A stretch of DNA of 64,000 nt. Source: Schmidtea polychroa (Eukaryota). Location of the stretch: the NCBI GenBank assembly GCA_044892525.1, contig CM097886.1, forward strand, positions 164,040,312 to 164,104,311, read 5' to 3'. The notes below the pieces were generated by a model, which saw nothing but the letters and a program-made list of their open reading frames with translations, did no database searches and had not been told where the DNA came from. The position numbers and the translations under genes were made by a program. Within the stretch, counting starts at the first letter, position 1, and each line of letters opens with the position of its first letter. This document shows, one piece after another, positions 23,168-51,075 of the stretch.

Positions 23168-23401
23168 NNNNNNNNNNNNNNNNNNNNNNNNNNNNNNNNN
23201 NNNNNNNNNNNNNNNNNNNNNNNNNNNNNNNNNNNNNNNNNNNNNNNNNNNNNNNNNNNNNNNNNNNNNNNNNNNNNNNNNNNNNNNNNNNNNNNNNNNN
23301 NNNNNNNNNNNNNNNNNNNNNNNNNNNNNNNNNNNNNNNNNNNNNNNNNNNNNNNNNNNNNNNNNNNNNNNNNNNNNNNNNNNNNNNNNNNNNNNNNNNN
23401 N
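23168..23401. other. Assembly gap (234 N)
   Basis: Run of N. Confidence 1.
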
Positions 23402-33380: not shown

Positions 33381-34618
33381 TTACATTAAGATAAAGTAAA
33401 AAAAATCGCATATTAATCAACTCAAAATTAAAATAATTATTTGTCAATGTAACTTCAATAAAATAAACTGGAATTAAACGAATATCGATTATTTTATAAT
33501 AATTTAAAATGTAAATACTCCATTTAATAATTTTATATATCCAAAGTTTGCATGCATTTTTTATTGTGCTGTGTTCGTGTTAAATTTAGTTTTTTTTACC
33601 ACTTTCTCAATATTTATAAATGCTATAAATTTTGAAGCATAAAAATTCAACACAAATGGTAAGTTTGTGTTTCCAAAATACACCGCATTGCATCGGATTA
33701 TGTGTTGGCAGGATAAAGTTATAACTGTGAACTATTGGCAAGAATTTATAAAAAATTATGGAAATTTCACATTTAAATTATTTAAAGGAATTTAATGACA
33801 AAATTATTTCAAAAAATGTAAGTTATTTTTAATTTTTAAATTTATTAAATAATTAAATAAATATAAAAATTTATAAATTGTCCATAATTTACTATTTTAA
33901 CAAAGATTTTTTTAAATTTTGTATTTTAAAATTTTATTTAAAAAAATATTTTAAAATATTGTGTTTGTATGTATCATATAATATAAATTATTGATTTTTT
34001 ATATATATAGATGTGATTTTCCGTGAAATCAGGTGTATAGGATTTTTTCAGTGTACCTTAAATTCGGATATTTGACATAAACGCATAACTCCGTAACTTT
34101 CTTTTAATTGGTTTAATTTTTAGCTAATCAAATTTAAGAATTATGTAGATATAATTAACTGTGCTGGAGTAACAGAATATTTTAACAAGTTTTCAACAAA
34201 TGAAAATTTTTTCCGATTTTTGTTTTAAAATGTGTTTAGTTCAAAACTTTGGACTTGTTGATTTTATTTTACAATGAATGATTTTGTTTACAATATCTCC
34301 AAAATTCTCGTTTCATCAATTTTAAATTATGTTATATCACTTATAAAATGTTTGGGAGATTAAAATTTTTTTTTCAAAATTACATTATTAATAAGTTAAT
34401 ACGTTATTAACTAGACATTCATTTGAAATTTTAATTAAAAAAATTCTTTTTAAAAATCAAAATTTTCATAAAAATGTCCAAATATATTTTACACTTTATA
34501 ATATTGTCAATAAAAAATATGCGTAAAAATTTATAAACATATTTTATAAACATATTATTAAAAGAATTTAATTAAAAAATCGTTTGAAAAACAGAAAATA
34601 TTAAAATTTTCACTGAAA

Positions 34619-35854
34619 ATGTTCGGCGATGTACAAAATCACGCCGATAACTTATCCGAGATCAAAAGTTCATTCAATTACAAATCCATCAATCTCAGTG
34701 ATAATTATGACAAATTAATTTATGTCTTTACGACAACTATTATAGCTCTCTGCTTCTTTTTCTCAGTAAATTACAATTATTTCTACATTGACTTTCAATG
34801 TAAAACGCAATCGGTGCCGTTTTCCTTTCAGTTTGTTGTCGAATATTTCCCCATATATTGCTGGACAGTGGGCACAATTCCAATAAATAGTGTTAATGAC
34901 ATTCCACAAACTGATGAAGGCTGGGATAAATTAGATAAGATCAACCGTATAACTTATTATCAATGGATTCCGACAATGTTGGGTATTATGTGTTTGGTTT
35001 GCTATTTTCCGAGAATGTTGTGGAAACGAATTTCTTCAAGAAATGCTTCAGCTGACCTAATTTCTCACTTGGATAACATCAATTTGCTGTATGAAGAAAA
35101 ATCTGAATCGGAATTGCTACTTGTGGCAAAAAGATTCCATGACAGTAACACATTATCGAAAACTATGGCTTATAGTCCCTTAATGAAATTCCTAAAAAAA
35201 TATATCCCATATATTCCATTTAGTGGATATTGCTCAACATATTTCGTCAGTTGGTATTTTATCATCAAACTCCTCTTTATTGGATCTGGATTTTTCAATA
35301 TTTGGATAATAAAGGATGTCATAGCATTTCCCCATCATGGATTTTATGATTTCTATTTCGAAGTTTTCGTCAAAATATTTGATCTAGATTATTGGCAAAC
35401 TTCTCTTTATTTCCCTTTCCAAACCATTTGTTACAATAAAGATCTAAAACATATTGGTGGAAGTGCAAGAACATTTTCTCAATGTATTCACCAACAGAAT
35501 ATGAATTATCGAATCATTGTCACATTTTTGAGTGTTTGGTCAATATTTTCCATTCTCATGACTTTGATTGGTCTATTTGTTTGGATCAATCGGATTTGCT
35601 TTAGAGTGTCGAGGAGAAGATTCGTCAAAAAATTATTAAAATTAAATCATAAAATTAATTTAAATAATTTAAATGATGAAACGAAAGATATTTTAAAGAA
35701 ATTTTTGTGTGAATATTTTAAATACGATGAGATCTTCATGCTTCACATGCTGTCAGCAAATGCTGGAGACGTGATTGTCGCAAGGATTGTGGGAATTTTG
35801 TGGAAAGAATTTTATCGAAATGAAATGGATCAAAAACTGAATAAAACCGCCTAG
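34619..35854 (+). CDS. Innexin (gap-junction protein) paralogue A, 411 aa, single exon
   Basis: Four TM segments, YYQW-P signature, two Cys in each extracellular loop (FQC..YCW; FP..TIC..QC), cytoplasmic LH..AGDVIV..I..LW motif. Confidence 0.93.
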   Translation: MFGDVQNHADNLSEIKSSFNYKSINLSDNYDKLIYVFTTTIIALCFFFSVNYNYFYIDFQCKTQSVPFSFQFVVEYFPIYCWTVGTIPINSVNDIPQTDEGWDKLDKINRITYYQWIPTMLGIMCLVCYFPRMLWKRISSRNASADLISHLDNINLLYEEKSESELLLVAKRFHDSNTLSKTMAYSPLMKFLKKYIPYIPFSGYCSTYFVSWYFIIKLLFIGSGFFNIWIIKDVIAFPHHGFYDFYFEVFVKIFDLDYWQTSLYFPFQTICYNKDLKHIGGSARTFSQCIHQQNMNYRIIVTFLSVWSIFSILMTLIGLFVWINRICFRVSRRRFVKKLLKLNHKINLNNLNDETKDILKKFLCEYFKYDEIFMLHMLSANAGDVIVARIVGILWKEFYRNEMDQKLNKTA

Positions 35855-37087
35855 TCATATTTCTTTGAATATTATATTTGTATAATTGTTTTTTTATTAT
35901 TTATTCTAATAATTATTAGACAAGTTTCGTATTGTCTAGTTTTGTAATCTTTTTTTGTAGAAATTTGAAAAAATAATTGAAACATGTTAAACATCCCTTT
36001 CCTACATACACCATTCACATCATCACGTCCTCATAGGCTCCCTAAATCAATCATAGCCATTATAGTTGGTTCTATAATATTTAGGCTGTTTATTTATGGT
36101 GTATAGCGTATATAACTATTATATAACTAGTATATAACTATTAATGCGAGTGTTGTTACGAAATCTTTAGAACCCAGACGAGTCACCTATAAAAATACTG
36201 TCTCAGGACAGATGGTGTGATTGTATTTAATACTTTTGTTTAAGAATACCAAAACAGAATAAATATTATAAATATTAATGATATATAAAAACTATTATAA
36301 CTTTACAAATTTATTCTAACAATAATATGCCTCTTGAAGTCCGGAGGGAAACTGACAATTTCGGTTCAATTACCTTGACGGATCTTGAAACTTTTATTAT
36401 GTTATTCTTTGCTTAGAAACTCCGGAGTTATCTCACGATGTGCTTTATCAAACGACTGAACTTTCAAATTTGTGAACTCAAGTTTCGGACTTTTTGATGG
36501 GTATCCTCAAAAGGTGACAATTTATATTTTGTCGTTATATTATAGAATTTCAGTCTAGTTTTCTTAAATACTAATATCTCCAGATCTGTTATCTTATACT
36601 TTGAAGTCCTTGTTAAATCTTCTTGAATTATTTAGTTTCTAGTTCAGTTATCGAATTTTCGTTACTAGGTTGTTTTTCTAAACTTTTTAATTTTCAATTC
36701 TTTTATCGATTATTATTATAGAGAATTACTATATAGTTATATTATTTGTTTACGAAAAGTACGTCCAGATGAAAATCACGATTGCAAATCGTAATTACAA
36801 TTAAAAAGTTACAATCAGTAAATTAATACCACACTACAATACCAATCTTGAAATGTCGGATAAAAGGAGTAAATCAATTTTTATAGATATACGTACTCCT
36901 TACGCAAATAATAATCAAAACTAGCAATCAGTGGATTGCGGAGGAGATTTAACATACTTCTCCTAGTCTTATCACGATGGATTGATTGTCTTGCATTCAA
37001 TTATTGGTATTGTATTTTAATTATATCAGCTGAATCTATAAATGGTATATAAATGGTAATACCATATAAAATAGCATTAGTTAAGAT

Positions 37088-37541
37088 CAGTGCTCAAAGT
37101 GGAACAAAATATGTGCCGGGATAGGCATGCTGTGGCACCCGGGATTCCAGGCTTTTATGCAGAAATTTTCAGTTGGGGGTGTTGCAAAATTTTGGGGGGT
37201 GTCCAACAAATTTTTTTGGGGGGGGGTGTACACCCATTTAATCATAAGTTGCTGGTTTAACTAAAATAAATAAGAGAATATACCTACCTATCCATTACTG
37301 CTGCTTGGGAAATTCTTAATTGAATAGAGAATAGAGAATAAAGAATATATATATATATATATACATACATATATGGATGTACTATGTGTGACCTTAATTG
37401 CAGTATTTGTGTGCCTATAAAATGAAATAAGTACCGGGATAAACCTATAGATTATATGAAATGAAGTGCCGGGATGCAATTCCGCCTACATAATCAATGC
37501 CGGGATAATATCCCGGCTATCCCGCCTCACTTCGAGCACTG
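37088..37541. mobile_element. hAT MITE, 454 bp
   Basis: TIRs CAGTGCTCAAAGTG / CACTTCGAGCACTG; perfect 8-bp TSD GTTAAGAT; repeated GCCGGGAT subterminal motifs. Confidence 0.92.
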
Positions 37542-37779
37542 GTTAAGATGTATTCAGAAATGTATTTAAAAGATATTTTTATTATGTAAATTAACCCTTA
37601 AATTTTAGAGAATTATATAATCCTAATTGCTAGTATTTGATCATATATTTCTAACTCAAGATCATAGAGACTATGATGATGAAAAGAAAGAAGCTTCATT
37701 GATGATAATGAATCATGACTTTGAAAATCAAGAATTATTTCTAAATTTTGACAATAATGATTCAAGCTCTTGACCTTTC

Positions 37780-38375
37780 ATAAATAACAAAAGTCGTGAA
37801 TACTTAAATAAATCGGGGCACGAAAGGAAAGAAAATACAACCAGTACAAACATACGTGAAAAAGAAAAACCTCAAATGATTGGTCCATAAAGACATTGAC
37901 AAATGTTGAAAAAATTGGAGATATAAATTTCATATTGAATATTTTCAAATTTTAGATTCGCAAATTGGTCACTTAAACTGGAGATTCGATAAGTTACATT
38001 AAATCAAATCAGATTTTGAATTTTTAACTGTATCTGCTCTAAACTCATTAAAAATTGACCAATTGCGAAATCAGGCGTTAGAATGTGGATAAAAATATAT
38101 CTGCGATGTTGATTCTACTGAAATGATCAGCCAGATTGAATCATTTCAAGTAAAAAAAGGAAATAGTAAAAAAATTAATTATGATAATATTGCTGCACTC
38201 AAAGTTAGAAAAATATAATTTTAAGTGTACTTTGCGATTACATATTTTATTTTAATAAATCAAAAAACTTGTTAATTATGCCTTTGCTATTTCTCTAAAT
38301 TCTAAAAGAATATAAATAAATAGGGCGCCAAAAAACTTCTTGTCCAGGGCGCGACAAACAATTACACCGGCTCTG
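37780..38375 (+). pseudogene. hAT transposase C-terminal remnant with right terminus
   Basis: INYDNIAALKVRK resembles the hAT C-terminal F..KARK motif; ends CACCGGCTCTG (reverse complement CAGAGCCGGTG). Left boundary approximate. Confidence 0.4.
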
Positions 38376-38452
38376 CAGAAAACATAAATTGTCGTTATAT
38401 TTTACATTAACTGAACAATTTTTATTTTTTAATTGTTTAGGTGTTTTTGTAA

Positions 38453-38990
38453 CAGGGGCGACCAACCTTTTCTTCCATAAGAACCAAAAACCATAAAATT
38501 AAATTATGGAGAGCCACAACTTGGCAAAAATAAAAAAACAAAATTTATTTTTACATAATTGTTTTTTAACCAATCATTCACTTTCCAATGTTTCTTTTTT
38601 GGGATTGCATTTTGGCTGCAAATTTTTTAAAATCTAGCTTATAATTTGTTAATACAATGCGAAGAAGTTTCAATTTTTTTTCAAATTTTTTTCAATGCTG
38701 CGAGCGACGCTTTGACTTAATATACTCCATTGCAGAATTTTCTTATCATATTTAGCTATTAAATTTTCACGGTGAATAATACAATGAACCGATATAAAAT
38801 AAGGTATTCTCTGATCTTTTTTTTAAAAGATCAACAAGACATATATTTTTACCTAACATCGCAGATGAACCATCTGTTGCAACACTTACTATTCGGTTTA
38901 AAGTAGGGTTTCCAAATATCCGGATTTACTGAAACCGCGGTTATCGGATAGACATTTTGGATTTATCCCGCGGATACCGGATAACTTTAT
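38453..38990. mobile_element. Unpaired hAT-like termini (CAGGGGCGACCAACC at 38453; TAGGGTTTCC with CCGGATA repeats at ~38903)
   Basis: Terminal motifs typical of hAT MITEs; partner ends and TSDs not found. Confidence 0.35.
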
Positions 38991-39738
38991 AAAAATAAAA
39001 AATATTGTTTAATATGGAACTTCACCAAAATTACTTTTATTTCTTATAAATAAAATTTAAAGTACATAAAAAATTTAAAGGATATACATAACTAAAATTA
39101 TATTTACTGCATTATTTCATTTAAATAATAATATTTTAGAAACACCAATGCATTAAATGATACATAGGAGAGACGAGATCTGATCTTCGTGCAGAAGTTT
39201 CCAGAAACCGAAAAAGTTCTCTCGGAATTTGTTGAAGTCGGCTTCACTGTCTCTTCATAAAAGCTGAAGAAAAACTAAGAGTGGATTTTGTTGGACCATT
39301 TGTTGATGATGATGATATATATGAGGAAGTTGAAAGATTCTTAAAGATTAATTAGAAATTTTGTTAAATTTAAAATATATTTTTATTGAAAAATATTTTA
39401 AAAAGAAGACTGAAATTTATCATTTTTAAAAAATATTTTTATCAAAAATTATTTTAAAAGAAAAACTGAAATTTTTTTAAATAACAAAAGAGATAAGTTT
39501 TTGAGTGTATAATTTATTAAAAAAAATTTATGGAATTTGTTAGTGATTTGAAAGCCGATATTATTGTTCTAACGGATGAGAATCATAATAATATAGTTTA
39601 TGATTTTAGTACCGACAATATCTTTCTCAGTAAAAGTTTGTTTCTTTAATCCTAATGTTTTTGTTAAATTTTGATCAAAGGTTATTTTTGTAATGTTATC
39701 AGCAAGAGATATTTTAACCAATTCATTATTTTGAATTT

Positions 39739-40690
39739 TTAAATCTTTAAATGGTGAGGGATTAATTGCCATTTCAGATAAAGTATTGATGTATAATTCA
39801 TCTTCGAAATAATGTTCAAATTTTGATTTTTCAACGGCACTTGGAGTTTTTGTTCATAGAATTTACCACTGATTTGATTGTTTTCATGATCAACTATCAC
39901 ATACATGACAGGGTTCTGCTTTTTATCGATTTTCAAAATTTGATATACTTCATCAGTCCAATTATTATCAAAATCTTTTATGAATGGAGAAGAGTTGATT
40001 TTACTAATTCTTACATGATCACCCACCTTGTATTTTGGTTTATCTATTTTTTCTGTCTACCTTAATATTTTTTTCGTAAAATCAACTGGTCTCTGTCCTT
40101 GTAATCCTCTATGTGGTGAAAGATTGTAACTGAAAACATTTTTTGGCCAAACATTTATCCAAGTCTTATTACCTTTATATACAAAATATTTTTTCAATCT
40201 TTCTTTTTCAATAAAGTTCGATTAAATATTTCTACATGAGTAGTTTGGAACTGAGAAAATACCGAGTAGAGATTTACTCCTTTGATAACCTCTTTAACTT
40301 TACTTTTATCAAATTGTTTTTCAAAATATTTACTTAAAAATTAATTTAATTAAATTTAATTGCCCACATTATTTGTAAATTACGAAGCCGACCATCATCA
40401 AATATTTCTTTTATTGAATCAGTCATTTCATTTGCAGATTTAGTTTTTATAGGAACAGCACGCGCGTATCTATTAAAAATATCAATACATATCAAAATAT
40501 ATTTGTATCCTTTGTTGATTTTTGAATAAGGTATCATTTCCATCAAATCAATTTACCAAAAATTAGTGATTATAAATTTTTTGTATGCTTTTGTTGGGAA
40601 TCGCTTTGTTTTGGAGGTTTTGACCGGTTTGTACAGTCTGGTTTTCATTTGTTATGGTGATAACAATGGAACCTAAAAAATTTATGATGA
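39739..40690 (-). pseudogene. Polinton c-integrase, frameshifted
   Basis: LYKPVK..W*IDLMEMIPYSKINKGYKYILICIDIFNRYARAVPIKTK; PHRGLQGQRPVD; GDHVRISK..NWTDEVYQI..Y.I.D....ISGKFYEQKLQ. Confidence 0.85.
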
Positions 40691-41118
40691 CAGCCATATT
40701 TATTTTTTGTGTTAAAAATTTAAGGAATTTTTTTCTTGAAAGATTCCTTGTTTAAATATTCTTGCGTTTGGTGAGAACTTTAATAATGTGTTTAAAAAAA
40801 TAATTAATTTAAATTGAGAAAGATTATTTGTGTTTAAAAAATAGTGAATTTTAATTGTGAATTTAAAATAAAAATTATTTGATTTCGAAATTTTCTTAAA
40901 ATGGTTGGATTGAATAATGAGTAATGATGAAAAATTTCGTGCTAATGTCAAGTTAATTTAAATGGACTTTTACAAACGGATGATAAATGCGCTCTTAAAT
41001 CTATCACATTTCAATTTAAACATCATTTGATGGATGATAAGGATAATTATAATAAGGATAATTTATATCGGATAATTCAGCGAAAATTTCGATTATATAT
41101 TATCATTTCTAACATCTG

Positions 41119-41889
41119 GTGATTGTGACCGCGTTTGTCTCTTGTTTATCATTGAAGATCAAAAGGTTACGTAGAAGTTATGAAAAGTATTCAGAAAGTT
41201 CAAAATCTAAACTCCGTAAAGCGATAAGTCTATACGATGGAACTATATTCAAAATTTTAAAATATGTAAATGTACAGCAAACATCAACAGTTGGAAGATA
41301 TATTAACGGAAGTAACCCAAAATTGATGTCTAAAAACAATCGATCTAAACTCATTTCTGAATTGAACCATACAAAAGCATCTACTCTATCTCTCAATGCT
41401 TCATGTTCGATTGACAAGTTTTCAGAAGATTTAACTAAATTACTGACGATTAATGATCCTGCTGGATATTTCGAATATTCACTGATTGTCTACTTTGTTG
41501 CGTTATCTCCAAAGTCCTCTATAGATAAACATTCTTCAAACGTCATATCTACAAATTCACTTGAAGTTGAATGGAAATATAATCTATTAACAATCGGTGA
41601 TGATAATGACAAACAAAGATTCCTAATGATGCAAAGAGTACTAATAAACCCACGGATTAGATTTCTTCTGGAAAGAGGGTCAAAGTGTTACAGAGAAAGA
41701 GAGTCTAGTAAACGAAATAACATTTATGGTTGCATTGTTGACAACAACATGTTTGTAACCAGTTTGAAAGGAATAAATGAAAAACCCAGATTAACTGATG
41801 TTGAAATGTTAAAAGAACCCACTTTTTGTTTATATATTATCTTTCTCATCAGATGCTTATTTTTAGTATCGACTAACAATAAAAAATGA
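41119..41889 (+). CDS. Orphan 256-aa ORF inside the Polinton remnant
   Basis: Stop-free for 256 codons in AT-rich DNA; A-rich on + like a sense strand; no ATG until far inside the frame (GTG start called); no recognisable domain. Confidence 0.35.
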   Translation: MIVTAFVSCLSLKIKRLRRSYEKYSESSKSKLRKAISLYDGTIFKILKYVNVQQTSTVGRYINGSNPKLMSKNNRSKLISELNHTKASTLSLNASCSIDKFSEDLTKLLTINDPAGYFEYSLIVYFVALSPKSSIDKHSSNVISTNSLEVEWKYNLLTIGDDNDKQRFLMMQRVLINPRIRFLLERGSKCYRERESSKRNNIYGCIVDNNMFVTSLKGINEKPRLTDVEMLKEPTFCLYIIFLIRCLFLVSTNNKK

Positions 41890-42060
41890 TTTTTTATGTC
41901 TTTGCAATACTAATCTTTCAGCTTTAGTAATATTTACATTACCACGAACAACATTATCAATAAAAAAAGATGGAAAAGTTTGTAAAATCGACATTCGTTT
42001 TGTATATGAAGCCTTTGTTAAAATATAGTAAACTCCTTCAAATTTAATTATTACTATCAT
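41863..42060 (-). pseudogene. Small basic Polinton-type ORF, frameshifted at its 3' end
   Basis: Motif similarity as above; continues as RKIIYKQKVG in another frame. Confidence 0.5.
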
Positions 42061-42117
42061 TATTTAACTGGATAGATTGTTTATAATTTTTATAAAGCGG
42101 AAAATACCCTATCCTAT

Positions 42118-44106
42118 TGTTGGGCTAGAACCGAGAATCGAGAGCTTGTTTTAATGAATCAAAAATACATAATATAAAAATCGCACCAAGTTAAATTAAA
42201 ACACCAATCAATACAAATTAAAGTACATAACACATTGATGATAAATAAGACCCGGGTGATAAAATCAAGGAACGAAAATAAAGGTCACAATCACTAACAC
42301 AATTAGGAGAAACATCACATTCGGAATAGCTAACAACTAAGAAATAAAATAATAATAAATAAAATAATGGGTAATAAATTAATTAATAATATGAAAAATT
42401 TCTAAATAAATAAATTTAAAATAAATTATCTAGTAAACTGGTAAAATAATAAAAAGTAGAATAAAAGTAGTAAAATTAGATAAACCATAAAATTTATAAA
42501 ACTAAATTGTTTAATGAAAACTAAAAATAAAACCAACAAAATTATTTAAATTATAAAACTTATAAAACCAAATTGTTTAAATTAATGAAACTAAAGTAAA
42601 ATTAACTGAACTTATTTAAATTATAAAACTTGTAAAACTAAATTAAAATTATCAAAAACTATTTAAATTATAGAATTTATAAAAATAAATCTTAAAAATT
42701 AATAAAAATTAGAATTTTGATTAATTAAATTTAAAAATAAATAATTGCACACATTCATGCATGCATGCAAAAATTAATCAGAATTGCCTCGCATTCTAAT
42801 TGGATATAACAGCAGAGAATGCGTAGGCGTATAATTCAATCAGTATAAATACAGAGTGAAATTTCATTTAAAATACTCTCTCCTCAACTGGTTACACAAC
42901 AATTCATTTACTGGCAGTGAACATATGCTCTCAATTTTCGATTCCGTGCCATCGCGGTGAGGTAAATTTGATTTTTGTTTTGTGTAATGTAATTTTGTTA
43001 GGTCTAATGTTATTTTAAATTGAAGTTAATTTTCGTTAATGTTATTTAGTTAATTTATTTTGTTATTTAGATAATGTTATTTTAAATTGAAGTTAATTGT
43101 TAATATCGGTATGGTATTATTCATTTTGTTGTTGTTAAGTCTAATGTTATACAATTTTAGGAATTAATAAAATTTTTAACGGAATTTGTTTTTAATTAAT
43201 TCTTATGTTTGGCGTATGTTATTTTTGTCCTTTTTGAATAATATTATAATTTAGGTTGGGTTTTTCTTGATATTTATATGTCGATGGTCTGGGCTGGGGG
43301 AAGGTTTGTGGACGGGTGGCACTACGTGCTGTTGGTCGGCAGATGTTTCGCCAGTTGAGTACATCGGGGTAGGGAATATAGATAGGGATATGAACGGTTA
43401 GAGGGGGAAAAATCAATTTGCGATAGTTTAGGGCCTTATTTAGAGTTAGGTAGTATAGGACGGCTCAGTCACTTTTATTTTTCATAGATATTCCTGAGTT
43501 AGGAGAAATAATAGAATAGTTATGAACTGTTGTCGGTAGATGAAGTAGGTTTAGGCAATTTTATAGAAACCACGAATAGTTAAGACATTCCATCGTTCAG
43601 GATTGGAAATACAGGCAGATCCCTGCTCAAATTTTCATGAGAAGTGTGGAAACATGTTTATTCACTTGTGAATAAGGGCCAATCCCTGCTCAAAATCTTT
43701 GAAGGATAATTTGGATATTATAGGAAATATATAACAATAATTATTAGATGGAAAATAAGGGCGGATCCCTGCGAAAAATTTTATGGGGGAACAGTTGGGA
43801 ATACCCTTACTTGAGGACCACAAATGATCTAAAAATAGCATACATAGAGAATAATGACGTAAGACCTTCTATCGGCAGTCTAGAACCTGAAGAGAGAATA
43901 CAATGGGGAGTAGTTTTAGCAATAGAGCTCACCTGCTCATTGTTTTTTCGCCTTTGTGTACATTACCAACATGGTCGTCGCCATGGGTACACAAATGGTT
44001 TAAGGTGCAATAGTCGTAAAGGTGCTTAGGAGAGAGTCATGTGAATAGCTAAATTACCCCTGACGTATTTAAAAATATAAAATGACACACCCCTAAGTAA
44101 CCAACA
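42118..44106 (-). mobile_element. Solo-LTR-like unit C (A/B family, reverse orientation), 1989 bp
   Basis: TGTTGGGCTAGAAC at 42118 is the exact reverse complement of the last 14 nt of A. Ends TAACCAACA; perfect 4-bp TSD CTAT. Confidence 0.8.
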
Positions 44107-45779
44107 CTATTCTTCAAGATCTGGAAATGTAGGGTAATAGGATTTAAGAAACCATTCCACGAAAAAGAACTCAAGTATCAGATTCAAGAATTACAAATTC
44201 AATCAAATTCATATTGGTACTTTTATTGATATGAATGTCTTATCGATGAAAACCAATTACTGTAATGAACCTGAAATATTTACAGCTTTATAAATCCTCA
44301 AGTACAGCCCTCTATGTGTCAATGTGTTTACAAGTGGAATATTAGGAATTAAAAAGTTAGATTATTTCATTCAAGTCCAAGAAATTCATAACTTTATAAA
44401 ATTAATGATCCTACAACAGATGAAGAAACTCTAGAATTTTTATTAAGCTAATTAATTAAGTTAGTTAATTGTTTTTAAATCTTTTTATTATCGACAAAAG
44501 CAAATATTCAAATTATTAATGAGAAAGAAACATATGTCTTCCAAACAATATTATTGAAGATGGTAAAACTGTTCCCTAATAAAAAGACCCGACTTTCATA
44601 TTGTGCTCCATAACTGTTGACTTACATGATAAACCATTTAACGGGAATTAATCTAGAGGGCAAAAAAACTCAACATATATGTTGGATGATGAGAGTAGGC
44701 CCATCACCACATTTAACCTCAACAAATATTATAAGACAGGGCCCAAGAGATACAGGATCAATGTGTGCGCCGAAGAGCGTAGATAAATAAAAATCATCTC
44801 CAATAGCTCAACAATTCAAATTCCCAATAGCTGAACAATCCAATTCCTCAAACAATAACAACAACTGTTAATATTATCTGTGTGTTAAACTTTATCAAAT
44901 TTTATTTTATTGACATTGATCAACATTCTGTGTTTTTTAACTTTATTGAATTTCATTTTATTGATTGTGTATAAATTTTTAGTTGTATTTTATTATAAAT
45001 TTTATGTACACTTATAATTTGTAAACATAAAAAATATATATATAAAGTGTATTTAAAAAAAAGAAATTGATATTTATAAATAATGATAATAATTTAAAAT
45101 ATATTTAAAAAGTATTAATTTTTACAAGTAATTATTAATTATTAATAAATAAAATTAATTCACATATAGAAAATGAAAATCTAAAATAAATAAAATTAAT
45201 TTATTCAAAATATTTTAGTATATAAACGACTCACAAAATCAGTGTAGTCGCCCAAAAATTTAGCATTCAACACTTATTCGAAGGTTAATCCTGAGAATAT
45301 TATAAAACCAGAATCAGACAGAAACGATTCACATAAAACACAACATATGTATTTTTTGCAAGCAGTTTGAAAGAAGTGATCCAAGAAATAATTGTTCGAG
45401 TTGAAACTAAAGTAAAATTAACTGAACTTATTTAAAATTATTGTTTTAGAACTGAAAATTATATATCTTGGGTAAATTTTTGTTATAATAAATATTTATA
45501 TACAGATTTGTTTTGATATTTACCTATATAAGAACCAGACAAGTTGAGTGTTTTTGAATATCGAGACCTCAACATATACATCAAAATAAAACTAATAATA
45601 ACACAAAGACATTTATGTAAAAGAAATATTTTATTATAGCTAAGTTGCATAAGTTGTTAAAAAAGAAATACATTTTATTACATTGATGAAGTGATAAAAA
45701 TTGAACCAATATTTAAATAATTTTAATCAAAATATATTTATATATTTTTTTCACAAATATAATATTCAAAGAAATAATT

Positions 45780-47015
45780 CTAGGCTGTTTTATTCAGTTT
45801 TTGATCCATTTCATTTCGATAAAATTCTTTCCACAAAATCCCAATGACCTTGGAAACAATCACGTCTCCAACCTTCGCTGTTATCATGTGAAGCATGAAG
45901 ATCTCATCGCATTTAAAATATTCATACAAGAATTTCTTTAAAATATCTTTCGTTTCATCGTTCATATCATTCAAATCAATATTACGATTAATTTTTAAAA
46001 ATCTTTTGACGAATCTTCTCCTCGACACTCTAAAGCAAATCCGATTGATCCAAACAAATAGACCAATCAAAGTCATGAGAATGGAAAATATTGACCAAAC
46101 ACTCAAAAATGTGACAATGATTCGATAATTCATATTCTGTTGGTGAATACATTGAGAAAATGTTCTTGCACTTCCACCAATATGTTTTAGATCTTTATTG
46201 TAACAAATGGTTTGGAAAGGGAAATAAAGAGAAGTTTGCCAATAATCTAGATCAAATATTTTGACGAAAACTTCGAAATAGAAATCATAAAATCCATGAT
46301 GGGGAAATGCTATGACATGCTTTATTATCCAAATATTGAAAAATCCAGATCCAATAAAGAGGAGTTTGATGATAAAATACCAACTGACGAAATATGTTGA
46401 GCAATATCCACTAAATGGAATATATGGGATATATTTTTTTAGGAATTTCATTAAGGGACTATAAGCCATAGTTTTCGATAATGTGTTACTGTCATGGAAT
46501 CTTTTTGCCACAAGTAGCAATTCCATTTCGTAATTCTCTGGAGATAGCAAATTGGTTTTATCCAAGTGACAAATGAGGTTAATTAAATCATTTTTATAAG
46601 TAATTCGTTTCCATAAAATTCTAGGAAAATAGCAAACCAAACACATAATACCCAACATTGTCGGAATCCATTGATAATAAGTTATACGGTTGATCTTATC
46701 TAATTTATCCCAGCCTTCATCAGTTTGTGGAATGTCATTAACACTATTTATTGGAATTGTGCCCACTGTCCAGCAATAGTTCGGGTAATAATCTATATCA
46801 AACTGGAATGAAAACGGAACAACTGTGGTAAGACATTGAAAATCAGTGCTGAAATAATTATAATTTACTGAGAAAAAGAAGCAGAGAGCTATAATAGTTG
46901 TCGTAAAGACATAAATTAATTTGTCATAATTATCATTGAGTTTGATGGATTTGTAATTGAATGAGCTTTGGATTTGGAATAGATCATTGGCATGATTTCT
47001 GACGATTCCAAACAT
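45780..47015 (-). CDS. Innexin paralogue B, 411 aa, single exon
   Basis: Same motifs as paralogue A; 54 of 411 residues differ by manual alignment (~87% identical). Confidence 0.93.
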   Translation of the reverse strand: MFGIVRNHANDLFQIQSSFNYKSIKLNDNYDKLIYVFTTTIIALCFFFSVNYNYFSTDFQCLTTVVPFSFQFDIDYYPNYCWTVGTIPINSVNDIPQTDEGWDKLDKINRITYYQWIPTMLGIMCLVCYFPRILWKRITYKNDLINLICHLDKTNLLSPENYEMELLLVAKRFHDSNTLSKTMAYSPLMKFLKKYIPYIPFSGYCSTYFVSWYFIIKLLFIGSGFFNIWIIKHVIAFPHHGFYDFYFEVFVKIFDLDYWQTSLYFPFQTICYNKDLKHIGGSARTFSQCIHQQNMNYRIIVTFLSVWSIFSILMTLIGLFVWINRICFRVSRRRFVKRFLKINRNIDLNDMNDETKDILKKFLYEYFKCDEIFMLHMITAKVGDVIVSKVIGILWKEFYRNEMDQKLNKTA

Positions 47016-47071
47016 TTTTCATAAGTTTATTGAGAAATGTTTATTTTTCAAACGAATTAATTAAAATTAGT

Positions 47072-48419
47072 AAAAATTCATTAATTTCAAAAATAAAATT
47101 TTAATAATTCAATTTAAAAATAAAAAAATTTTAAAATTATAAGTAGGCCTAATTTTTGAAGGATTTATTATTTTATTAAATTTTTATGGTTTATTTTAAC
47201 AATTTATCGAATTTAAAAAAATTCATTTTTATTCTTTTAATTTGATGTTAATTTTAAAAAGTTTTTAATTATTTATAATTGTTGTGTTCAAAAATATTAT
47301 TTTCTATACTTCTTTCAATTTATTAGGGTCCTCTAATCCTCAGCTTCTCGAGCCAGCAAAATAGCAGAGAAATAGAATTTTTTTTAAATTATTTAATTAA
47401 TATTTTAACTTCATATTAGCATTATAAAATTTGTATATTTAAGACACAATAAATAAAAAGTTTAAATTATTCATAATATTTTAATATATTTTTTAAATTG
47501 TAATTAAAATAATTTTGGGAGATAAACATTCGAAAAAATTCATTAATTACCCGTAATTTCAAAAATAAAATTCTAATAATTCAATTTAAAAATAAAATAA
47601 TTTTAAAATTATAAGTAGGCCTAATTATTGAAGGATTTATTATTTTATTAATTTTTTATGGTTTATTTTAACAATTTATCGAATTTAACAAAACTCATTT
47701 TTTATTCTTTTAATTTGATGTTAATTTTTAAAAGTTTTTAATTATTTATAATTGTTGTGTTCAAAAATATTATTTTCTATACTTCTTTCAATTTATTAGG
47801 GTCCTCTAATCCTCAGCTTCTCGAGCCAGCAAAATAGCAGAGAAATAGAATTTTTTTTAAATTATTTAATTAATATTTTAACTTCATATTAGCATTATAA
47901 AATTTGTATATTTAAGACACAATAAATAAAAAGTTTAAATTATTCATAATATTTTAATATATTTTTTAAATTGTAATTAAAATAATTTTGGGAGATAAAC
48001 ATTCGAAAAAATTCATTAATTACCCGTAATTTCAAAAATAAAATTCTAATAATTCAATTTAAAAATAAAATAATTTTAAAATTATAAGTAGGCCTAATTA
48101 TTGAAGGATTTATTATTTTATTAATTTTTTATGGTTTATTTTAACAATTTATCGAATTTAACAAAACTCATTTTTTATTCTTTTAATTTGATGTTAATTT
48201 TTAAAAGTTTTTAATTATTTATAATTGTTGTGTTCAAAAATATTATTTTCTATACTTCTTTCAATTTATTAGGGTCCTCTAATCCTCAGCTTCTCGAGCC
48301 AGCAAAATAGCAGAGAAATAGAATTTTTTTTTAATTATTTAATTAAAATTTTAACTTCATATTAGCATTATAAAATTTGTATATTTAAGACACAATAAAT
48401 AAAAAGTTTAAATTATTCA
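47072..48419. repeat. Tandem array of a 472-473-bp unit, ~2.8 copies, directly upstream of innexin B
   Basis: Marker GTAGGCCT at 47143, 47615 and 48088; core TTAGGGTCCTCTAATCCTCAGCTTCTCGAGCCAGC occurs three times; copies are near identical. Confidence 0.95.
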
Positions 48420-51075
48420 AATGTTAGTGTTTTTTGAAAATATATTACATTAAATAAATTCATTTTTAAAATTATTACTTTAATTTTCTTATAAGAACTT
48501 TTTTCAATTTTCACCACTGATTTATTTCCAATTTACGGTGTATTTATTAAAAAACTTGACTATGAATCAGTAAAGATATCGATGTTTTTTTGATATTCAC
48601 GAATTTTCTGCGCTGCATTTTTCTTTTTTCCTTTTTTTCTTTTTAATTTACTTAATTTTAAATTTTAATTTATTTCAAAATTACTACTTATTTACTTTCA
48701 TTTTCCAGGCGACATTGTTTCTTCAAAATGTTACATTAATTAATTTTTTTAATTTATGTAAACTTAATTTCTCAGTCGAAGCACTTCTTAACAATTTACT
48801 ACTTATTTTATATTATTACCCTAATTTTAAATACTTTATTTACTGTCATTTAAAATTATTACTTTAATTTAAATATAATACCATACTTTCTCAGAAGTCA
48901 TGGTTTCTAAAAAATAATTTACTATAAATTACTGTAAAAAATACCCCATTACTATAGTGTATCACATTGACATAAAAAGATGTCGGACACTGCAGCAAAG
49001 TCTATTTATTCTTTATTTTATAAATTTATTTTTATTGTAAAAAAATTAGCTAGAGTTTTTTAATTAAATAAAAATGTTTTCATTAAAAAATTAGGCCTAT
49101 TGTTTAAGAAAAATTACTTTGATTTTTGATTGAAAATTTTAAGTTTTTAAAAATTACCTGAACTTTTTCATTAAAAAATAAATTTTAATGTTTTTATCGA
49201 AAAATAATACTTAAGGTATTTTTATTGAAAATTAAATTTTATACTTTTTAATCAAAAAAGATTAACTTAGGGTTCTTTGATTGAAAATATTAAGTTATTA
49301 AAAAATTACCAGAGATTTTTCAATTAAAAATAAATTTTAATATTTTTAATCGAGAAAAAGTATTTAGGCTTTTTAACGAGAAAAAATACTTGGACTCTTT
49401 TTTAATGTAAAATAATTTTTAAGATTTTTACATAGGAAAAAAATTAAAAATTAAATTGAAAAAGAAATTACAAAAATATTTTTGAACCCAACCCTTTCCC
49501 ATTAAAAAATATTTATGGATGGGGTCTTAAAAATTCCCATGGGCCATACTCCTACTTTCCCTTTACTCTAGAAAGGTGTGCCCAACCTTTGCGACCTAGT
49601 GAGCTACTTTTTATTTTCTGAACCAATAGCGATCGACTAAATGCAAATACTTTGAATTTTAGTAAAATTTAATAAAAAATAAACAAAAATAGTTAACATT
49701 AAAAAAAAACATTTATTTGATGAGATGTTTGACATTCAATATTATCAGCTATTTTTGAGTAATTAGGTTCATAATTACTGACAGCTAAACATAAGCAGTA
49801 GTCAAGATGATTTTCAGTTATACGTGTACGATATTTAGATTTGATATAATTCATATGAGAAAATGACGACTCGCATAAATATGTAGATGCAAAACAGGAA
49901 TGGACTCTAAGATAAGCATCTTTTAATAGCGGATATTTCTCTATCGTAATAAACTTCCATATGTCAAGTTGATCAACTGATTTCAAGCTAATATCCATTG
50001 TAGTTCAATTAATTCCATTTCCAAGCTCCCTACGTTCATACTAAATTCTTCTCCGATTAGTACAGCTATATTTTCGATATTTATTTTAGAAATTGGTGAT
50101 AATAAAAACGATGTGATTGGAGGAAGTTTTTCAAAGTCCACAAATCTTTGTTGAAATTGGACAAATATGTTTTGCAATATATTACCAAATTGTTTATAAT
50201 CTGTATTTGAACTCATTTCGTCTTTTAAATTTGAGAAATGTTTCAAATCTTTTTTATTAATTTGAGATATCCATAATTCCAGATTTAGTTCATTTAATTT
50301 TATTGTAAGATCCGTTAAAAAAGCCAATTTTTGCAGCCAAATCTTGTCGAGAAATAAAACAGCATAGGGATCGTTTTTTATATGTGGTACCAGCTTGTGG
50401 AATCTTTATAAAACTTTATCTTTGGACAACCATTTTACTGAATTATGGAGAAGTAGATCACCGTATTCTGCACCAATGCTATCTAAAAGTCATCTTTGTA
50501 GTGCATTTGCCCGAATTGAATTAATTATTTTAATCGTTGCATTCATAACATCATCAAGGTTCAACATTTTACCACATAATGATTGTTGATGAATTATTGT
50601 GATATCTAATAAATTTAGGAACATCAATAGCTCTTTTATAAAAAGCTAAAAATCCATTTTCGCAACTTGTCATAGAAGAAGCACCATCAGTAGTAATAGA
50701 AGCGAGCTTCTGAAGAGGAAGATTTTCATATAATACGAAAGATTTAAAAATATTGAAACGTCTTATCCTCTGGTTTTTTCTTTCAAATATAGAATTTTAA
50801 GAAATTCTTCCTTCGTTGTTGAATCAGCATAAACTAAACGTACAAATATATCATATCACAATTGTCATTTGATTCAACAAATTGTAGTGAAAACAATGAA
50901 CAATTTTCAAAATCCCGTTTAAGTTGTGATCTCAAGTCAATTGCCATGTTTTCAACACGTCTTGCTACGGTTTGTCTGGAAAGTTGCATATCTTTGATAG
51001 CATCAACAATTTCCATTTTATTATTAAAATTTTGAAATAAGCTATCTGCTGTTGCCAAAAAGGCTTCTTTGAATA

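What the first reader, a model, noticed from the sequence alone, without database searches (positions are those of the whole stretch)
34619..47015. Inverted innexin pair is a mosaic of nucleotide-identical and anciently diverged blocks
Both genes are 411 aa, and the homology is essentially limited to the CDS. By manual alignment, codons ~28-55 and ~80-130 are identical or nearly so, and codons 165-337 (519 nt) differ at a single base (D233H), with no synonymous change. In contrast, the N-terminus (9 aa differences), the first half of extracellular loop 1 (10 aa plus 6 synonymous differences in ~24 codons), the cytoplasmic loop (16 aa) and the C-tail (18 aa, including a reciprocal C364Y/Y369C swap) are strongly diverged. 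This is the pattern expected from ongoing gene conversion that is excluded from four modules. In innexin structures the N-terminus lines the pore and the extracellular loops mediate docking, so the two genes may encode channels with a shared scaffold but different gating or partner specificity.
Basis: partly seen in the sequence, partly recalled or inferred. Interest (0 to 1): 0.78.

Follow-up and report, generated by a model that had tools for sequence, protein, structure and literature searches.

The report
Partly homogenised inverted innexin gene pair
Two old, inverted copies of a planarian gap-junction (innexin) gene keep two thirds of their coding sequence almost identical by copying from each other, while four segments stay deeply diverged; this is a clean example of a known process (partial concerted evolution), apparently new for innexins.

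Summary
Two intronless 411-codon innexin ORFs (34619-35854 +, 45780-47015 -) align without gaps. Their 103 differences sit almost entirely in four blocks: codons 1-27, 56-79, 131-164 and 338-392. Synonymous divergence is 0.67 in those blocks and 0.013 elsewhere (Fisher p=1.5e-17).

Best reading (about 0.85): an old duplicate pair whose core is repeatedly homogenised by gene conversion between the two copies.
- The one close homologue from another organism (P0001) groups with copy B in the variable blocks (AU test rejects an A+B clade, p=0.02).
- In the identical blocks A and B group together (B+P0001 rejected, p=0.04).
- Short-read contigs from two studies carry both versions of the variable blocks. 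The identical blocks appear as single contigs at about double depth, so this is not an assembly artefact.
- In the second strain the C-tail boundary lies elsewhere, and about six strain-specific changes appear with no second variant.

Not shown: that selection keeps the four modules apart, or that the channels differ. dN/dS is below 1 in all four blocks, other innexin pairs do not escape at the same modules, and no RNA evidence was found.

The genome matches Schmidtea polychroa schPol2. This is a new member of a known kind, of moderate interest.

The parts
34619..35854 (+). Innexin copy A, intronless 411-codon ORF
   Evidence: ORF. Pfam PF00876 E=3e-40. AF2 model pLDDT 85.7 with four TM helices; best PDB match is INX-6.
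45780..47015 (-). Innexin copy B, intronless 411-codon ORF, inverted relative to A
   Evidence: ORF. Pfam PF00876 E=1e-40. 87% aa identity to A.
34619..34699 (+). Variable block 1 (codons 1-27; B: 46935-47015): N-terminal tail, N-terminal helix and linker to TM1
   Evidence: 9 aa differences, dS 1.49, dN/dS 0.12. Net charge -1 in A, +2 in B. Predicted helix 9-18.
34700..34783 (+). Homogenised block (codons 28-55; B: 46851-46934): TM1
   Evidence: One synonymous difference. Predicted helix 29-55.
34784..34855 (+). Variable block 2 (codons 56-79; B: 46779-46850): EL1 between conserved C61 and C81
   Evidence: 10 aa plus 6 synonymous differences, dS 1.34. Both versions are present as contigs 34754-34885 in runs X5/X6.
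34856..35008 (+). Homogenised block (codons 80-130; B: 46626-46778): second half of EL1 and TM2 with YYQW
   Evidence: 0 differences. A single contig 34856-35010 at depth 83, about the sum of the two variant contigs, in X5.
35009..35110 (+). Variable block 3 (codons 131-164; B: 46524-46625): cytoplasmic end of TM2 and first helices of the cytoplasmic loop
   Evidence: 16 aa differences, dS 0.44, dN/dS 0.64. A-like and B-like contigs 34981-35139 in X5/X6; the alternative letters match B.
35111..35629 (+). Homogenised block (codons 165-337; B: 46005-46523): rest of the cytoplasmic loop, TM3, EL2, TM4 and start of the C-tail
   Evidence: One difference in 519 nt (35315, D233H). A single contig 35110-35723 at about 2x depth in X5/X6 carrying about 6 strain differences.
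35630..35794 (+). Variable block 4 (codons 338-392; B: 45840-46004): C-terminal helices
   Evidence: 18 aa differences, dS 0.44, dN/dS 0.37. The two-variant stretch (bubble) is 35601-35824 in X1 but only 35694-35824 in X6.
35795..35881 (+). Homogenised block (codons 393-411, stop and 27 nt of 3' flank; B: 45753-45839)
   Evidence: One synonymous difference in the CDS. 24 of 27 nt after the stop are identical, then homology ends abruptly.
35882..45752 (.). 9.9-kb spacer between the inverted copies, with no A/B homology; carries transposon debris
   Evidence: Fragmentary rve integrase ORFs and an S6e-like ORF. No other inverted repeat of substance.

Best explanation
A and B are old paralogues. 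In the variable blocks the duplication is older than the split from the organism that carries homologue P0001. The two genes lie head to head (divergently oriented), 9.9 kb apart.

Repair of DNA breaks that uses the other copy as template (non-allelic gene conversion; inverted repeats cannot delete the spacer by crossover) has repeatedly overwritten about two thirds of the coding sequence. That part covers TM1, the second half of EL1 with TM2, the rest of the cytoplasmic loop through TM3, EL2 and TM4, and the extreme C-terminus. Those parts stay 99.6% identical at the nucleotide level.

Four segments have escaped and now differ by 18-33% in nucleotides: the N-terminus, EL1 between the two cysteines, the start of the cytoplasmic loop and the middle of the C-tail. 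That is enough divergence to stop heteroduplex formation at their borders, so the mosaic is self-maintaining.

Shown: the mosaic, its synonymous-site signature, the discordant block trees, and the presence of both copies in independent read sets. Inferred: the repair mechanism, that conversion is still going on, and heteroduplex rejection as the barrier. Whether selection for two channel types also protects the escaped modules is open; I put it at about 0.3.
For: - Nei-Gojobori dS is 0.67 in the variable blocks and 0.013 in the homogenised blocks; dN is 0.22 against 0.002.
- Fisher test on synonymous sites gives p=1.5e-17.
- The longest identical run is 315 nt, reached in 0 of 20000 permutations.
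- P0001 differs from A=B at 54 of 271 residues in the homogenised blocks. In the variable blocks the distances are A-B 53, A-P 53 and B-P 41 of 140. The contrast of site patterns gives p=8e-14.
- In rooted ML trees the variable blocks give (A,(B,P0001)) with support 80/87, and the AU test rejects A+B (p=0.0215). The homogenised blocks give (A,B) with support 92/89, and the AU test rejects B+P0001 (p=0.039).
- No other paralogue in the 781-Mb assembly exceeds 30% aa identity, so there is no third donor.
- In runs X5/X6 (a second study and strain) both versions of the EL1 and cytoplasmic-loop blocks are present at depths 41/51 and 43/57. The homogenised blocks are single contigs at depth about 83. 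Contig ends fall exactly 30 nt from the A/B differences.
- About 6 strain-specific substitutions in the 519-nt core appear with no second variant, and the C-tail boundary differs between strains.
- dS differs among the escaped blocks (pS 0.63 against 0.33, p=0.019), which suggests escape at different times.
- The homogenised blocks include stretches that are among the least conserved in the family (residues 91-110, 171-200, 401-411), so protein constraint cannot explain their identity.
Against: - Only one orthologue-grade sequence (P0001, protein only) was available. The outgroups are fragments, branch supports are 80-92% and the AU p-values are only 0.02-0.04.
- The read evidence comes from Logan contigs, which collapse single-base differences. 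The D233H site reads G in X1 and C in X2. Exact identity of the two copies in the second strain is therefore inferred from contig structure and depth, not seen in reads.
- There is no GC-biased-conversion signature. GC3 is 0.31 in the homogenised blocks and 0.38 in the variable blocks.
- No conversion event has been observed directly.
Confidence: 0.85

Rival explanations
1. The escaped modules are kept apart by selection. The N-terminal funnel, the cytoplasmic-loop/C-tail dome and the EL1 constriction would form co-adapted sets, and converted chimeras would be removed. The pair would then encode two channel types on one shared scaffold. This refines the best explanation rather than replacing it.
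For: - Three of the four blocks map to parts that contact each other in INX-6: the cytoplasmic loop and C-tail form the dome that holds the N-terminal loop. The fourth block leads into the EL1 helix, which forms the second pore constriction.
- Both versions of the N-terminal, EL1 and cytoplasmic-loop blocks are nearly unchanged between strains.
- dN/dS is below 1 in each block, so both versions are maintained.
- The N-terminal net charge differs, -1 against +2.
- The variable blocks are only slightly less conserved family-wide than the homogenised blocks: 0.34 against 0.40, and 0.41 against 0.40 among this genome's own paralogues.
- The upstream regions of the two genes are entirely different.
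Against: - No block has dN/dS above 1.
- The start of the C-tail block appears homogenised in the second strain.
- Two other mosaic innexin pairs do not diverge at the same modules; odds ratios are 1.4-1.7 and not significant.
- 18-33% nucleotide divergence is by itself enough to block conversion without any selection.
- No expression data were found.
Confidence: 0.3
2. Assembly or polishing artefact: the identical blocks were created by collapse or by cross-talk between the copies during polishing.
For: Near-identical paralogue segments are a known hazard. Logan contigs cannot exclude a few hidden single-base differences.
Against: - Two independent studies show both variable versions, and single double-depth contigs for the shared blocks, with breakpoints exactly where the reference places them.
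- The assembly statistics match schPol2, which was built with hifiasm from 14-22 kb HiFi reads and polished only with homozygous HiFi variants. A 12.4-kb pair can be spanned by a single read.
Confidence: 0.03
3. Recent whole-CDS duplication followed by fast local divergence of four patches, through positive selection or error-prone repair.
For: Nonsynonymous changes are numerous in the patches, and several codons differ at all three positions.
Against: - Synonymous divergence in the patches is 0.44-1.5, against 0.013 in the homogenised blocks combined.
- Both copies carry derived states relative to P0001: 25 A-specific and 13 B-specific.
- The AU test rejects A+B as sisters in these blocks.
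- The flanks share no homology, as expected for an old pair.
Confidence: 0.03
4. Strong purifying selection alone, including on synonymous sites, keeps the blocks identical, with no conversion.
For: The blocks contain the TM helices and the conserved motifs.
Against: - P0001 differs from A=B at 20% of residues in these same blocks.
- The blocks include family-wide poorly conserved stretches.
- There are 2 synonymous differences in 158 synonymous sites, against 35 in 80 next door.
- The second strain carries 3 synonymous and 3 nonsynonymous changes in the core.
Confidence: 0.02

Closest known systems
Interlocus gene conversion with persistent islands of divergence (e.g. GOT1 paralogues of Tigriopus californicus, PMC3728101; mammalian pairs under concerted evolution for over 100 My, PMC2720389; the mosaic-divergence model for HMA4, bioRxiv 10.1101/2025.10.29.685298)
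   Same: Paralogues are more alike than orthologues over part of the gene. Homogenised tracts have sharp borders and alternate with old, diverged islands. The synonymous sites show the same mosaic.
   Different: This is an inverted, intronless gap-junction gene pair whose homology stops at the CDS. A full-text search found no paper describing gene conversion between innexin paralogues. Selection on the islands is not shown here.
C. elegans INX-6 gap-junction channel (PDB 5H1Q/5H1R; PMC5146279)
   Same: Same fold (Foldseek TM 0.66-0.70). Shared features are the YYQW motif, two cysteines in each extracellular loop, an N-terminal helix, and a helical cytoplasmic loop and C-tail.
   Different: Only 15-16% sequence identity. 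Oligomeric state, docking and channel activity of A and B are unknown.
Arm-to-arm conversion in palindromes and inverted segmental duplications (human Y ampliconic genes, PMC2997549). Within this genome, the perfect inverted innexin pair at G000:C3:24026942-24034853
   Same: Inverted repeats on one chromosome are homogenised by intrachromosomal conversion without loss of the spacer.
   Different: In palindromes the whole arm, including non-coding DNA, is homologous. L045/L046 are 100% identical over 2313 nt. In A/B only the CDS is homologous, and only in patches.
Innexin isoforms that differ in the N-terminus through alternative exons (Drosophila ShakB variants forming rectifying junctions; from my own knowledge, not checked here)
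   Same: A shared channel core is combined with alternative N-terminal and cytoplasmic modules.
   Different: Here the alternatives are two genes, not splice forms. No functional difference has been shown.

Membership tests
Innexin (PF00876) | Significant match to the family profile over its full length | tested here: met
   A scores E=3.1e-40 and B E=1.3e-40, both covering profile positions 2-333 of 333.
Innexin (PF00876) | Four transmembrane helices with cytoplasmic N- and C-termini and an innexin/pannexin fold | tested here: met
   AF2 model with pLDDT 85.7 has helices 29-55, 117-141, 208-236 and 292-327. The best PDB matches are INX-6 entries, followed by pannexins and LRRC8.
Innexin (PF00876) | YYQW motif in TM2 and two conserved cysteines in each extracellular loop | tested here: met
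   YYQW lies at residues 113-116. C61 and C81 are in EL1, C271 and C289 in EL2. All are present in both copies and conserved in the 60-sequence alignment.
Innexin (PF00876) | Forms gap-junction channels or hemichannels | not testable with these tools
   Needs expression and electrophysiology.
Concerted evolution by interlocus gene conversion | Paralogues closer to each other than to the orthologue over part of the gene, with the reverse elsewhere | tested here: met
   Site patterns. Block trees and AU tests give p=0.0215 and 0.039. The test is limited to one orthologue-grade protein.
Concerted evolution by interlocus gene conversion | The mosaic is present at synonymous sites and the identical runs are longer than chance | tested here: met
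   dS is 0.67 against 0.013. Fisher p=1.5e-17. A 315-nt identical run is reached in 0 of 20000 permutations.
Concerted evolution by interlocus gene conversion | Conversion still active: tracts polymorphic, or substitutions shared by both copies within a lineage | tested here: inconclusive
   In runs X5/X6 the core contig carries about 6 strain differences at double depth with no second variant. The C-tail bubble starts at 35724, not 35631. These are collapsed contigs, not reads.
Divergence islands maintained by selection | Excess of nonsynonymous change, or recurrence of the same islands in independent pairs | tested here: not met
   dN/dS is 0.12-0.64. The L007/L008 and L032/L033 pairs are not enriched for differences in the same modules.

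The most novel reading that the evidence does not exclude
The four escaped modules may be co-adapted gating and pore cassettes. They are the N-terminal funnel, the cytoplasmic-loop/C-tail dome that holds it, and the EL1 constriction. Selection would keep them distinct, while conversion keeps the TM bundle and the EL2 docking hairpin identical. The pair would then be the genomic equivalent of alternative-exon isoforms in an intronless gene. Docking compatibility between A and B hemichannels would be guaranteed, while gating, rectification or regulation could differ.
Probability: 0.2. Interest if true: 0.65.

Novelty: new member of a known kind. Interest (0 to 1): 0.42.

Why it matters
This is a very clean natural example of partial concerted evolution. 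The borders are sharp, synonymous divergence differs about 50-fold between block classes, and the block trees conflict. The protein's structure allows each block to be assigned to a channel part.

It also gives planarian gap-junction biology a ready-made chimera design. Nature has already swapped the N-terminus, EL1, cytoplasmic loop and C-tail on an otherwise identical scaffold, so oocyte pairing of A, B and single-module chimeras could map which module sets gating and which sets compatibility.

There is a practical warning as well. A whole-gene tree or a whole-gene dS for this pair would date the duplication wrongly.

Tried and rejected
- **Third-party donor.** A six-frame search of the whole assembly found 87 innexin matches, but none above 30% aa identity to A or B. 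Rejected.
- **More orthologues.** The 5.8-billion-protein search gave only P0001. Its DNA was not on record. A metagenome scan found no relative. The 50%-cluster library gave only fragments at 38-46% identity, which I used as outgroups.
- **Low constraint as the sole cause of escape.** Among 15 of this genome's own paralogues the variable and homogenised blocks are equally conserved (0.41 against 0.40, p=0.78). Among 57 diverse innexins the difference is small (0.34 against 0.40, p=0.003), and the homogenised blocks contain the least conserved stretches. Not sufficient.
- **Recurrent escape at the same modules in other pairs.** Not significant.
- **GC-biased conversion.** No signal.
- **Hidden flank homology or a shared upstream motif.** Not above shuffles.
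- **LTR or other mobile element carrying both genes** (a lead from earlier scan notes). No flanking direct repeats and no shared flanks.
- **Expression.** No RNA run held the sequence. The runs that do hold it have contigs that break at genomic repeats, so they are probably DNA. Expression remains unknown.
- **Complex prediction** was not used. A pass for two paralogues of an oligomeric channel would not separate the hypotheses.


Full report
**What is there.** The window holds two intronless 411-codon ORFs: A at 34619-35854 (+) and B at 45780-47015 (-). Both match Pfam Innexin PF00876 over the whole profile, at E about 1e-40. An AlphaFold2 model of A, built on a 60-sequence alignment, has mean pLDDT 85.7. 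It shows an N-terminal helix (9-18), TM1 (29-55), EL1 with a strand at 59-63 and a helix at 76-84, TM2 (117-141), three cytoplasmic-loop helices, TM3 (208-236), EL2 (242-291), TM4 (292-327) and four C-terminal helices. Its best solved matches are the C. elegans INX-6 structures (TM 0.66-0.72), followed by pannexins and LRRC8. The YYQW motif and the four extracellular cysteines are present in both copies.

**Which genome.** The assembly has 781.27 Mb in 1012 contigs, and the second-largest contig is 189,691,935 bp. That equals the N50 published for Schmidtea polychroa schPol2, which has 781.29 Mb, 1013 contigs and 28.1% GC (PMC11410931). The genome is therefore almost certainly S. polychroa. 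Planarians are known to have very large innexin families; at least 46 are reported in Dugesia ryukyuensis (PMC12654950). Here I found at least 87 matches.

**Check of the observation.** The two CDSs align without gaps, with 103 nt differences in 79 codons. The differences fall in codons 1-27, 56-79, 131-164 and 338-392. The other 271 codons carry three differences: codon 52 (synonymous), D233H, and codon 410 (synonymous).
- Nei-Gojobori estimates are dS 0.67 and dN 0.22 in the four variable blocks, against dS 0.013 and dN 0.002 elsewhere.
- Per block, dS is 1.49, 1.34, 0.44 and 0.44, and dN/dS is 0.12, 0.24, 0.64 and 0.37.
- The longest identical run (315 nt) was never reached in 20000 permutations.
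- A Fisher test on synonymous sites alone gives p=1.5e-17.
- The inverted repeat is confined to 34616-35881 and 45753-47018. Gapped alignments of 150 nt and 1 kb of flank score like shuffles.

**Is it an artefact?** Only Logan contigs were available, not raw reads. I laid four runs from two studies on copy A at 80% likeness, so that contigs from copy B also align.

In runs X5 and X6 (second study, a diverged strain) the contig ends fall exactly 30 nt from the A/B differences, as expected for a k=31 graph:
- Two contigs cover 34754-34885, one A-like and one with 20 differences plus 2 gaps (depths 41 and 51).
- One contig covers 34856-35010 with no difference (depth 83).
- Two contigs cover 34981-35139, with 0 and 25 differences (depths 43 and 57). 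The alternative letters match B site by site.
- One contig covers 35110-35723 (depth 82.5).

Both copies and the mosaic therefore exist in an independent data set, and the shared blocks have about the summed depth.

In run X1 (first study) the C-tail bubble 35601-35824 shows an A version and a version with 27 differences. The caveat is that Logan contigs collapse single-base bubbles. The D233H site reads G in X1 and C in X2, so a few hidden single-base differences cannot be excluded.

The published assembly method also makes cross-talk between the copies unlikely. It used hifiasm on 14-22 kb HiFi reads and polished only with homozygous HiFi variants.

**Evidence for concerted evolution.**
- No other paralogue in the assembly exceeds 30% identity, so the variable blocks were not imported from a third gene.
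- The only close homologue in the protein databases, P0001, is also 411 aa and 74% identical to A. It comes from another organism, because no such copy exists in this assembly.
- In the homogenised blocks A=B, while P0001 differs at 54 of 271 residues. In the variable blocks the distances are A-B 53, A-P 53 and B-P 41 of 140. At sites where A and B differ, P0001 agrees with B 25 times and with A 13 times. The contrast of site patterns gives p=8e-14.
- I rooted the trees with fragmentary relatives at 38-46% identity. The variable blocks give (A,(B,P0001)) with support 80/87, and the AU test rejects an A+B clade (p=0.0215). The homogenised blocks give (A,B) with support 92/89, and B+P0001 is rejected (p=0.039). 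The two halves analysed separately give the same topologies.
It comes out as predicted, but with only one orthologue-grade sequence and moderate support.
- The two 5' blocks have higher synonymous divergence than the two 3' blocks (pS 0.63 against 0.33, p=0.019). This suggests escape at different times.

**Is conversion still going on?** The X5/X6 core contig differs from the reference at 35194, 35233, 35270, 35311, 35446 and 35538. Three of these are synonymous and three are not (L218F, I231M, W307L). No second variant appears, and depth stays at about double. Both copies in that strain therefore seem to carry these changes.

The C-tail bubble in X5/X6 starts at the codon-369 difference (35724), whereas in X1 it starts at codon 338 (35631). 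Position 35704 is the B letter in all X5/X6 contigs. So at least codons 362-364, and perhaps 338-352, are homogenised in that strain.

I read this as tract ends that vary between strains, which means recent conversion. Raw long reads are needed to prove it.

**Why these four blocks?** Three are cytoplasmic. In INX-6 the cytoplasmic loops and C-tails interlock into a dome that holds the N-terminal loop, and the N-terminal funnel and the EL1 helix are the two pore constrictions. The EL2 hairpins fill the docking cavities (PMC5146279). The variable EL1 segment is the stretch between the two conserved cysteines. EL2 is identical in A and B.

This fits a model of two gating or pore variants on one scaffold, but I could not show selection:
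- dN/dS is below 1 everywhere.
- The blocks are only slightly less conserved family-wide than the homogenised ones.
- Two other mosaic pairs do not diverge at the same modules.
- Part of the C-tail block is homogenised in another strain.
- Nucleotide divergence of 18-33% would by itself stop heteroduplex formation, so a neutral lock-in is enough.

The homogenised blocks contain some of the least conserved stretches of the family (residues 91-110, 171-200, 401-411), so protein constraint does not explain their identity.

**Context in the genome.** Most close innexin pairs are 97-100% identical segmental duplications or palindromes whose flanks are also homologous. One example is a perfect 2.3-kb inverted pair on C3.

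Two older pairs resemble A/B: homology is limited to the CDS, and synonymous and nonsynonymous differences cluster together.
- L007/L008: inverted, 250 kb apart, 0 of 2000 permutations.
- L032/L033: direct, 138 kb apart, 4 of 2000 permutations.

Partial concerted evolution may therefore be common in this family.

The two genes have unrelated upstream regions. A has unique DNA with a dispersed 250-bp repeat about 0.7 kb upstream. B has three copies of a local 473-bp tandem repeat starting 48 nt from its ATG.

**Comparison with what is known.** Mosaic divergence caused by interlocus gene conversion is well described (PMC3728101, PMC2720389, bioRxiv 10.1101/2025.10.29.685298). A full-text search for innexin together with gene conversion found no paper on this. 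I therefore class the finding as a new member of a known kind. It is a clean example with a useful structural reading, and of moderate interest.

Noticed in passing
window 47063-48457: Three tandem copies of a 473-bp unit start 48 nt upstream of copy B's ATG. The unit has no other copy in the genome, only short weak matches. It may be part of B's promoter region.
   Followed up: partly
window 41119-41889 (+): A 256-aa ORF in the spacer has a weak Ribosomal_S6e match (E=2.5e-10). It is one of at least 22 dispersed, mostly broken S6e-like matches in the genome. The strongest match (167.6 bits) is at G000:C3:69330435-69330812.
   Followed up: partly
window 39569-40546 (-): Short ORFs with a fragmentary rve integrase match (E=0.002) indicate decayed retroelement debris between the two innexin genes.
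   Followed up: no
window about 33700-33960: A dispersed repeat of about 250 bp lies upstream of copy A, with over 1000 first-look candidates genome-wide at 76-89% identity. The short-read contig of run X2 breaks at its edge.
   Followed up: partly
L007 (G000:C1:199913938-199915119 +) and L008 (G000:C1:200165810-200166982 -); L032 and L033 (G000:C1:83201123 and 83062800): Two more innexin pairs have CDS-limited homology and clustered synonymous plus nonsynonymous differences (0/2000 and 4/2000 permutations). They are probably further cases of partial concerted evolution.
   Followed up: partly
L045/L046 (G000:C3:24026942-24034853); L025/L026 (G000:C2:177770224 and G000:C4:91683284): L045/L046 is an inverted innexin pair that is 100% identical over at least 2313 nt, arms included. 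L025/L026 is a 98.8% identical 3.9-kb innexin-bearing segment present on two different chromosomes. These are recent segmental or mobile duplications.
   Followed up: partly
L009/L010/L017 (G000:C3:45058699, 45185229, 45073018): Three innexin copies have 99.7-100% aa identity. For L009/L010, nucleotide homology (98.4%) stops about 110 nt outside the CDS. This could be whole-CDS conversion or retroposition.
   Followed up: no
window 23168-23401: The only run of N in the window (234 nt).
   Followed up: no
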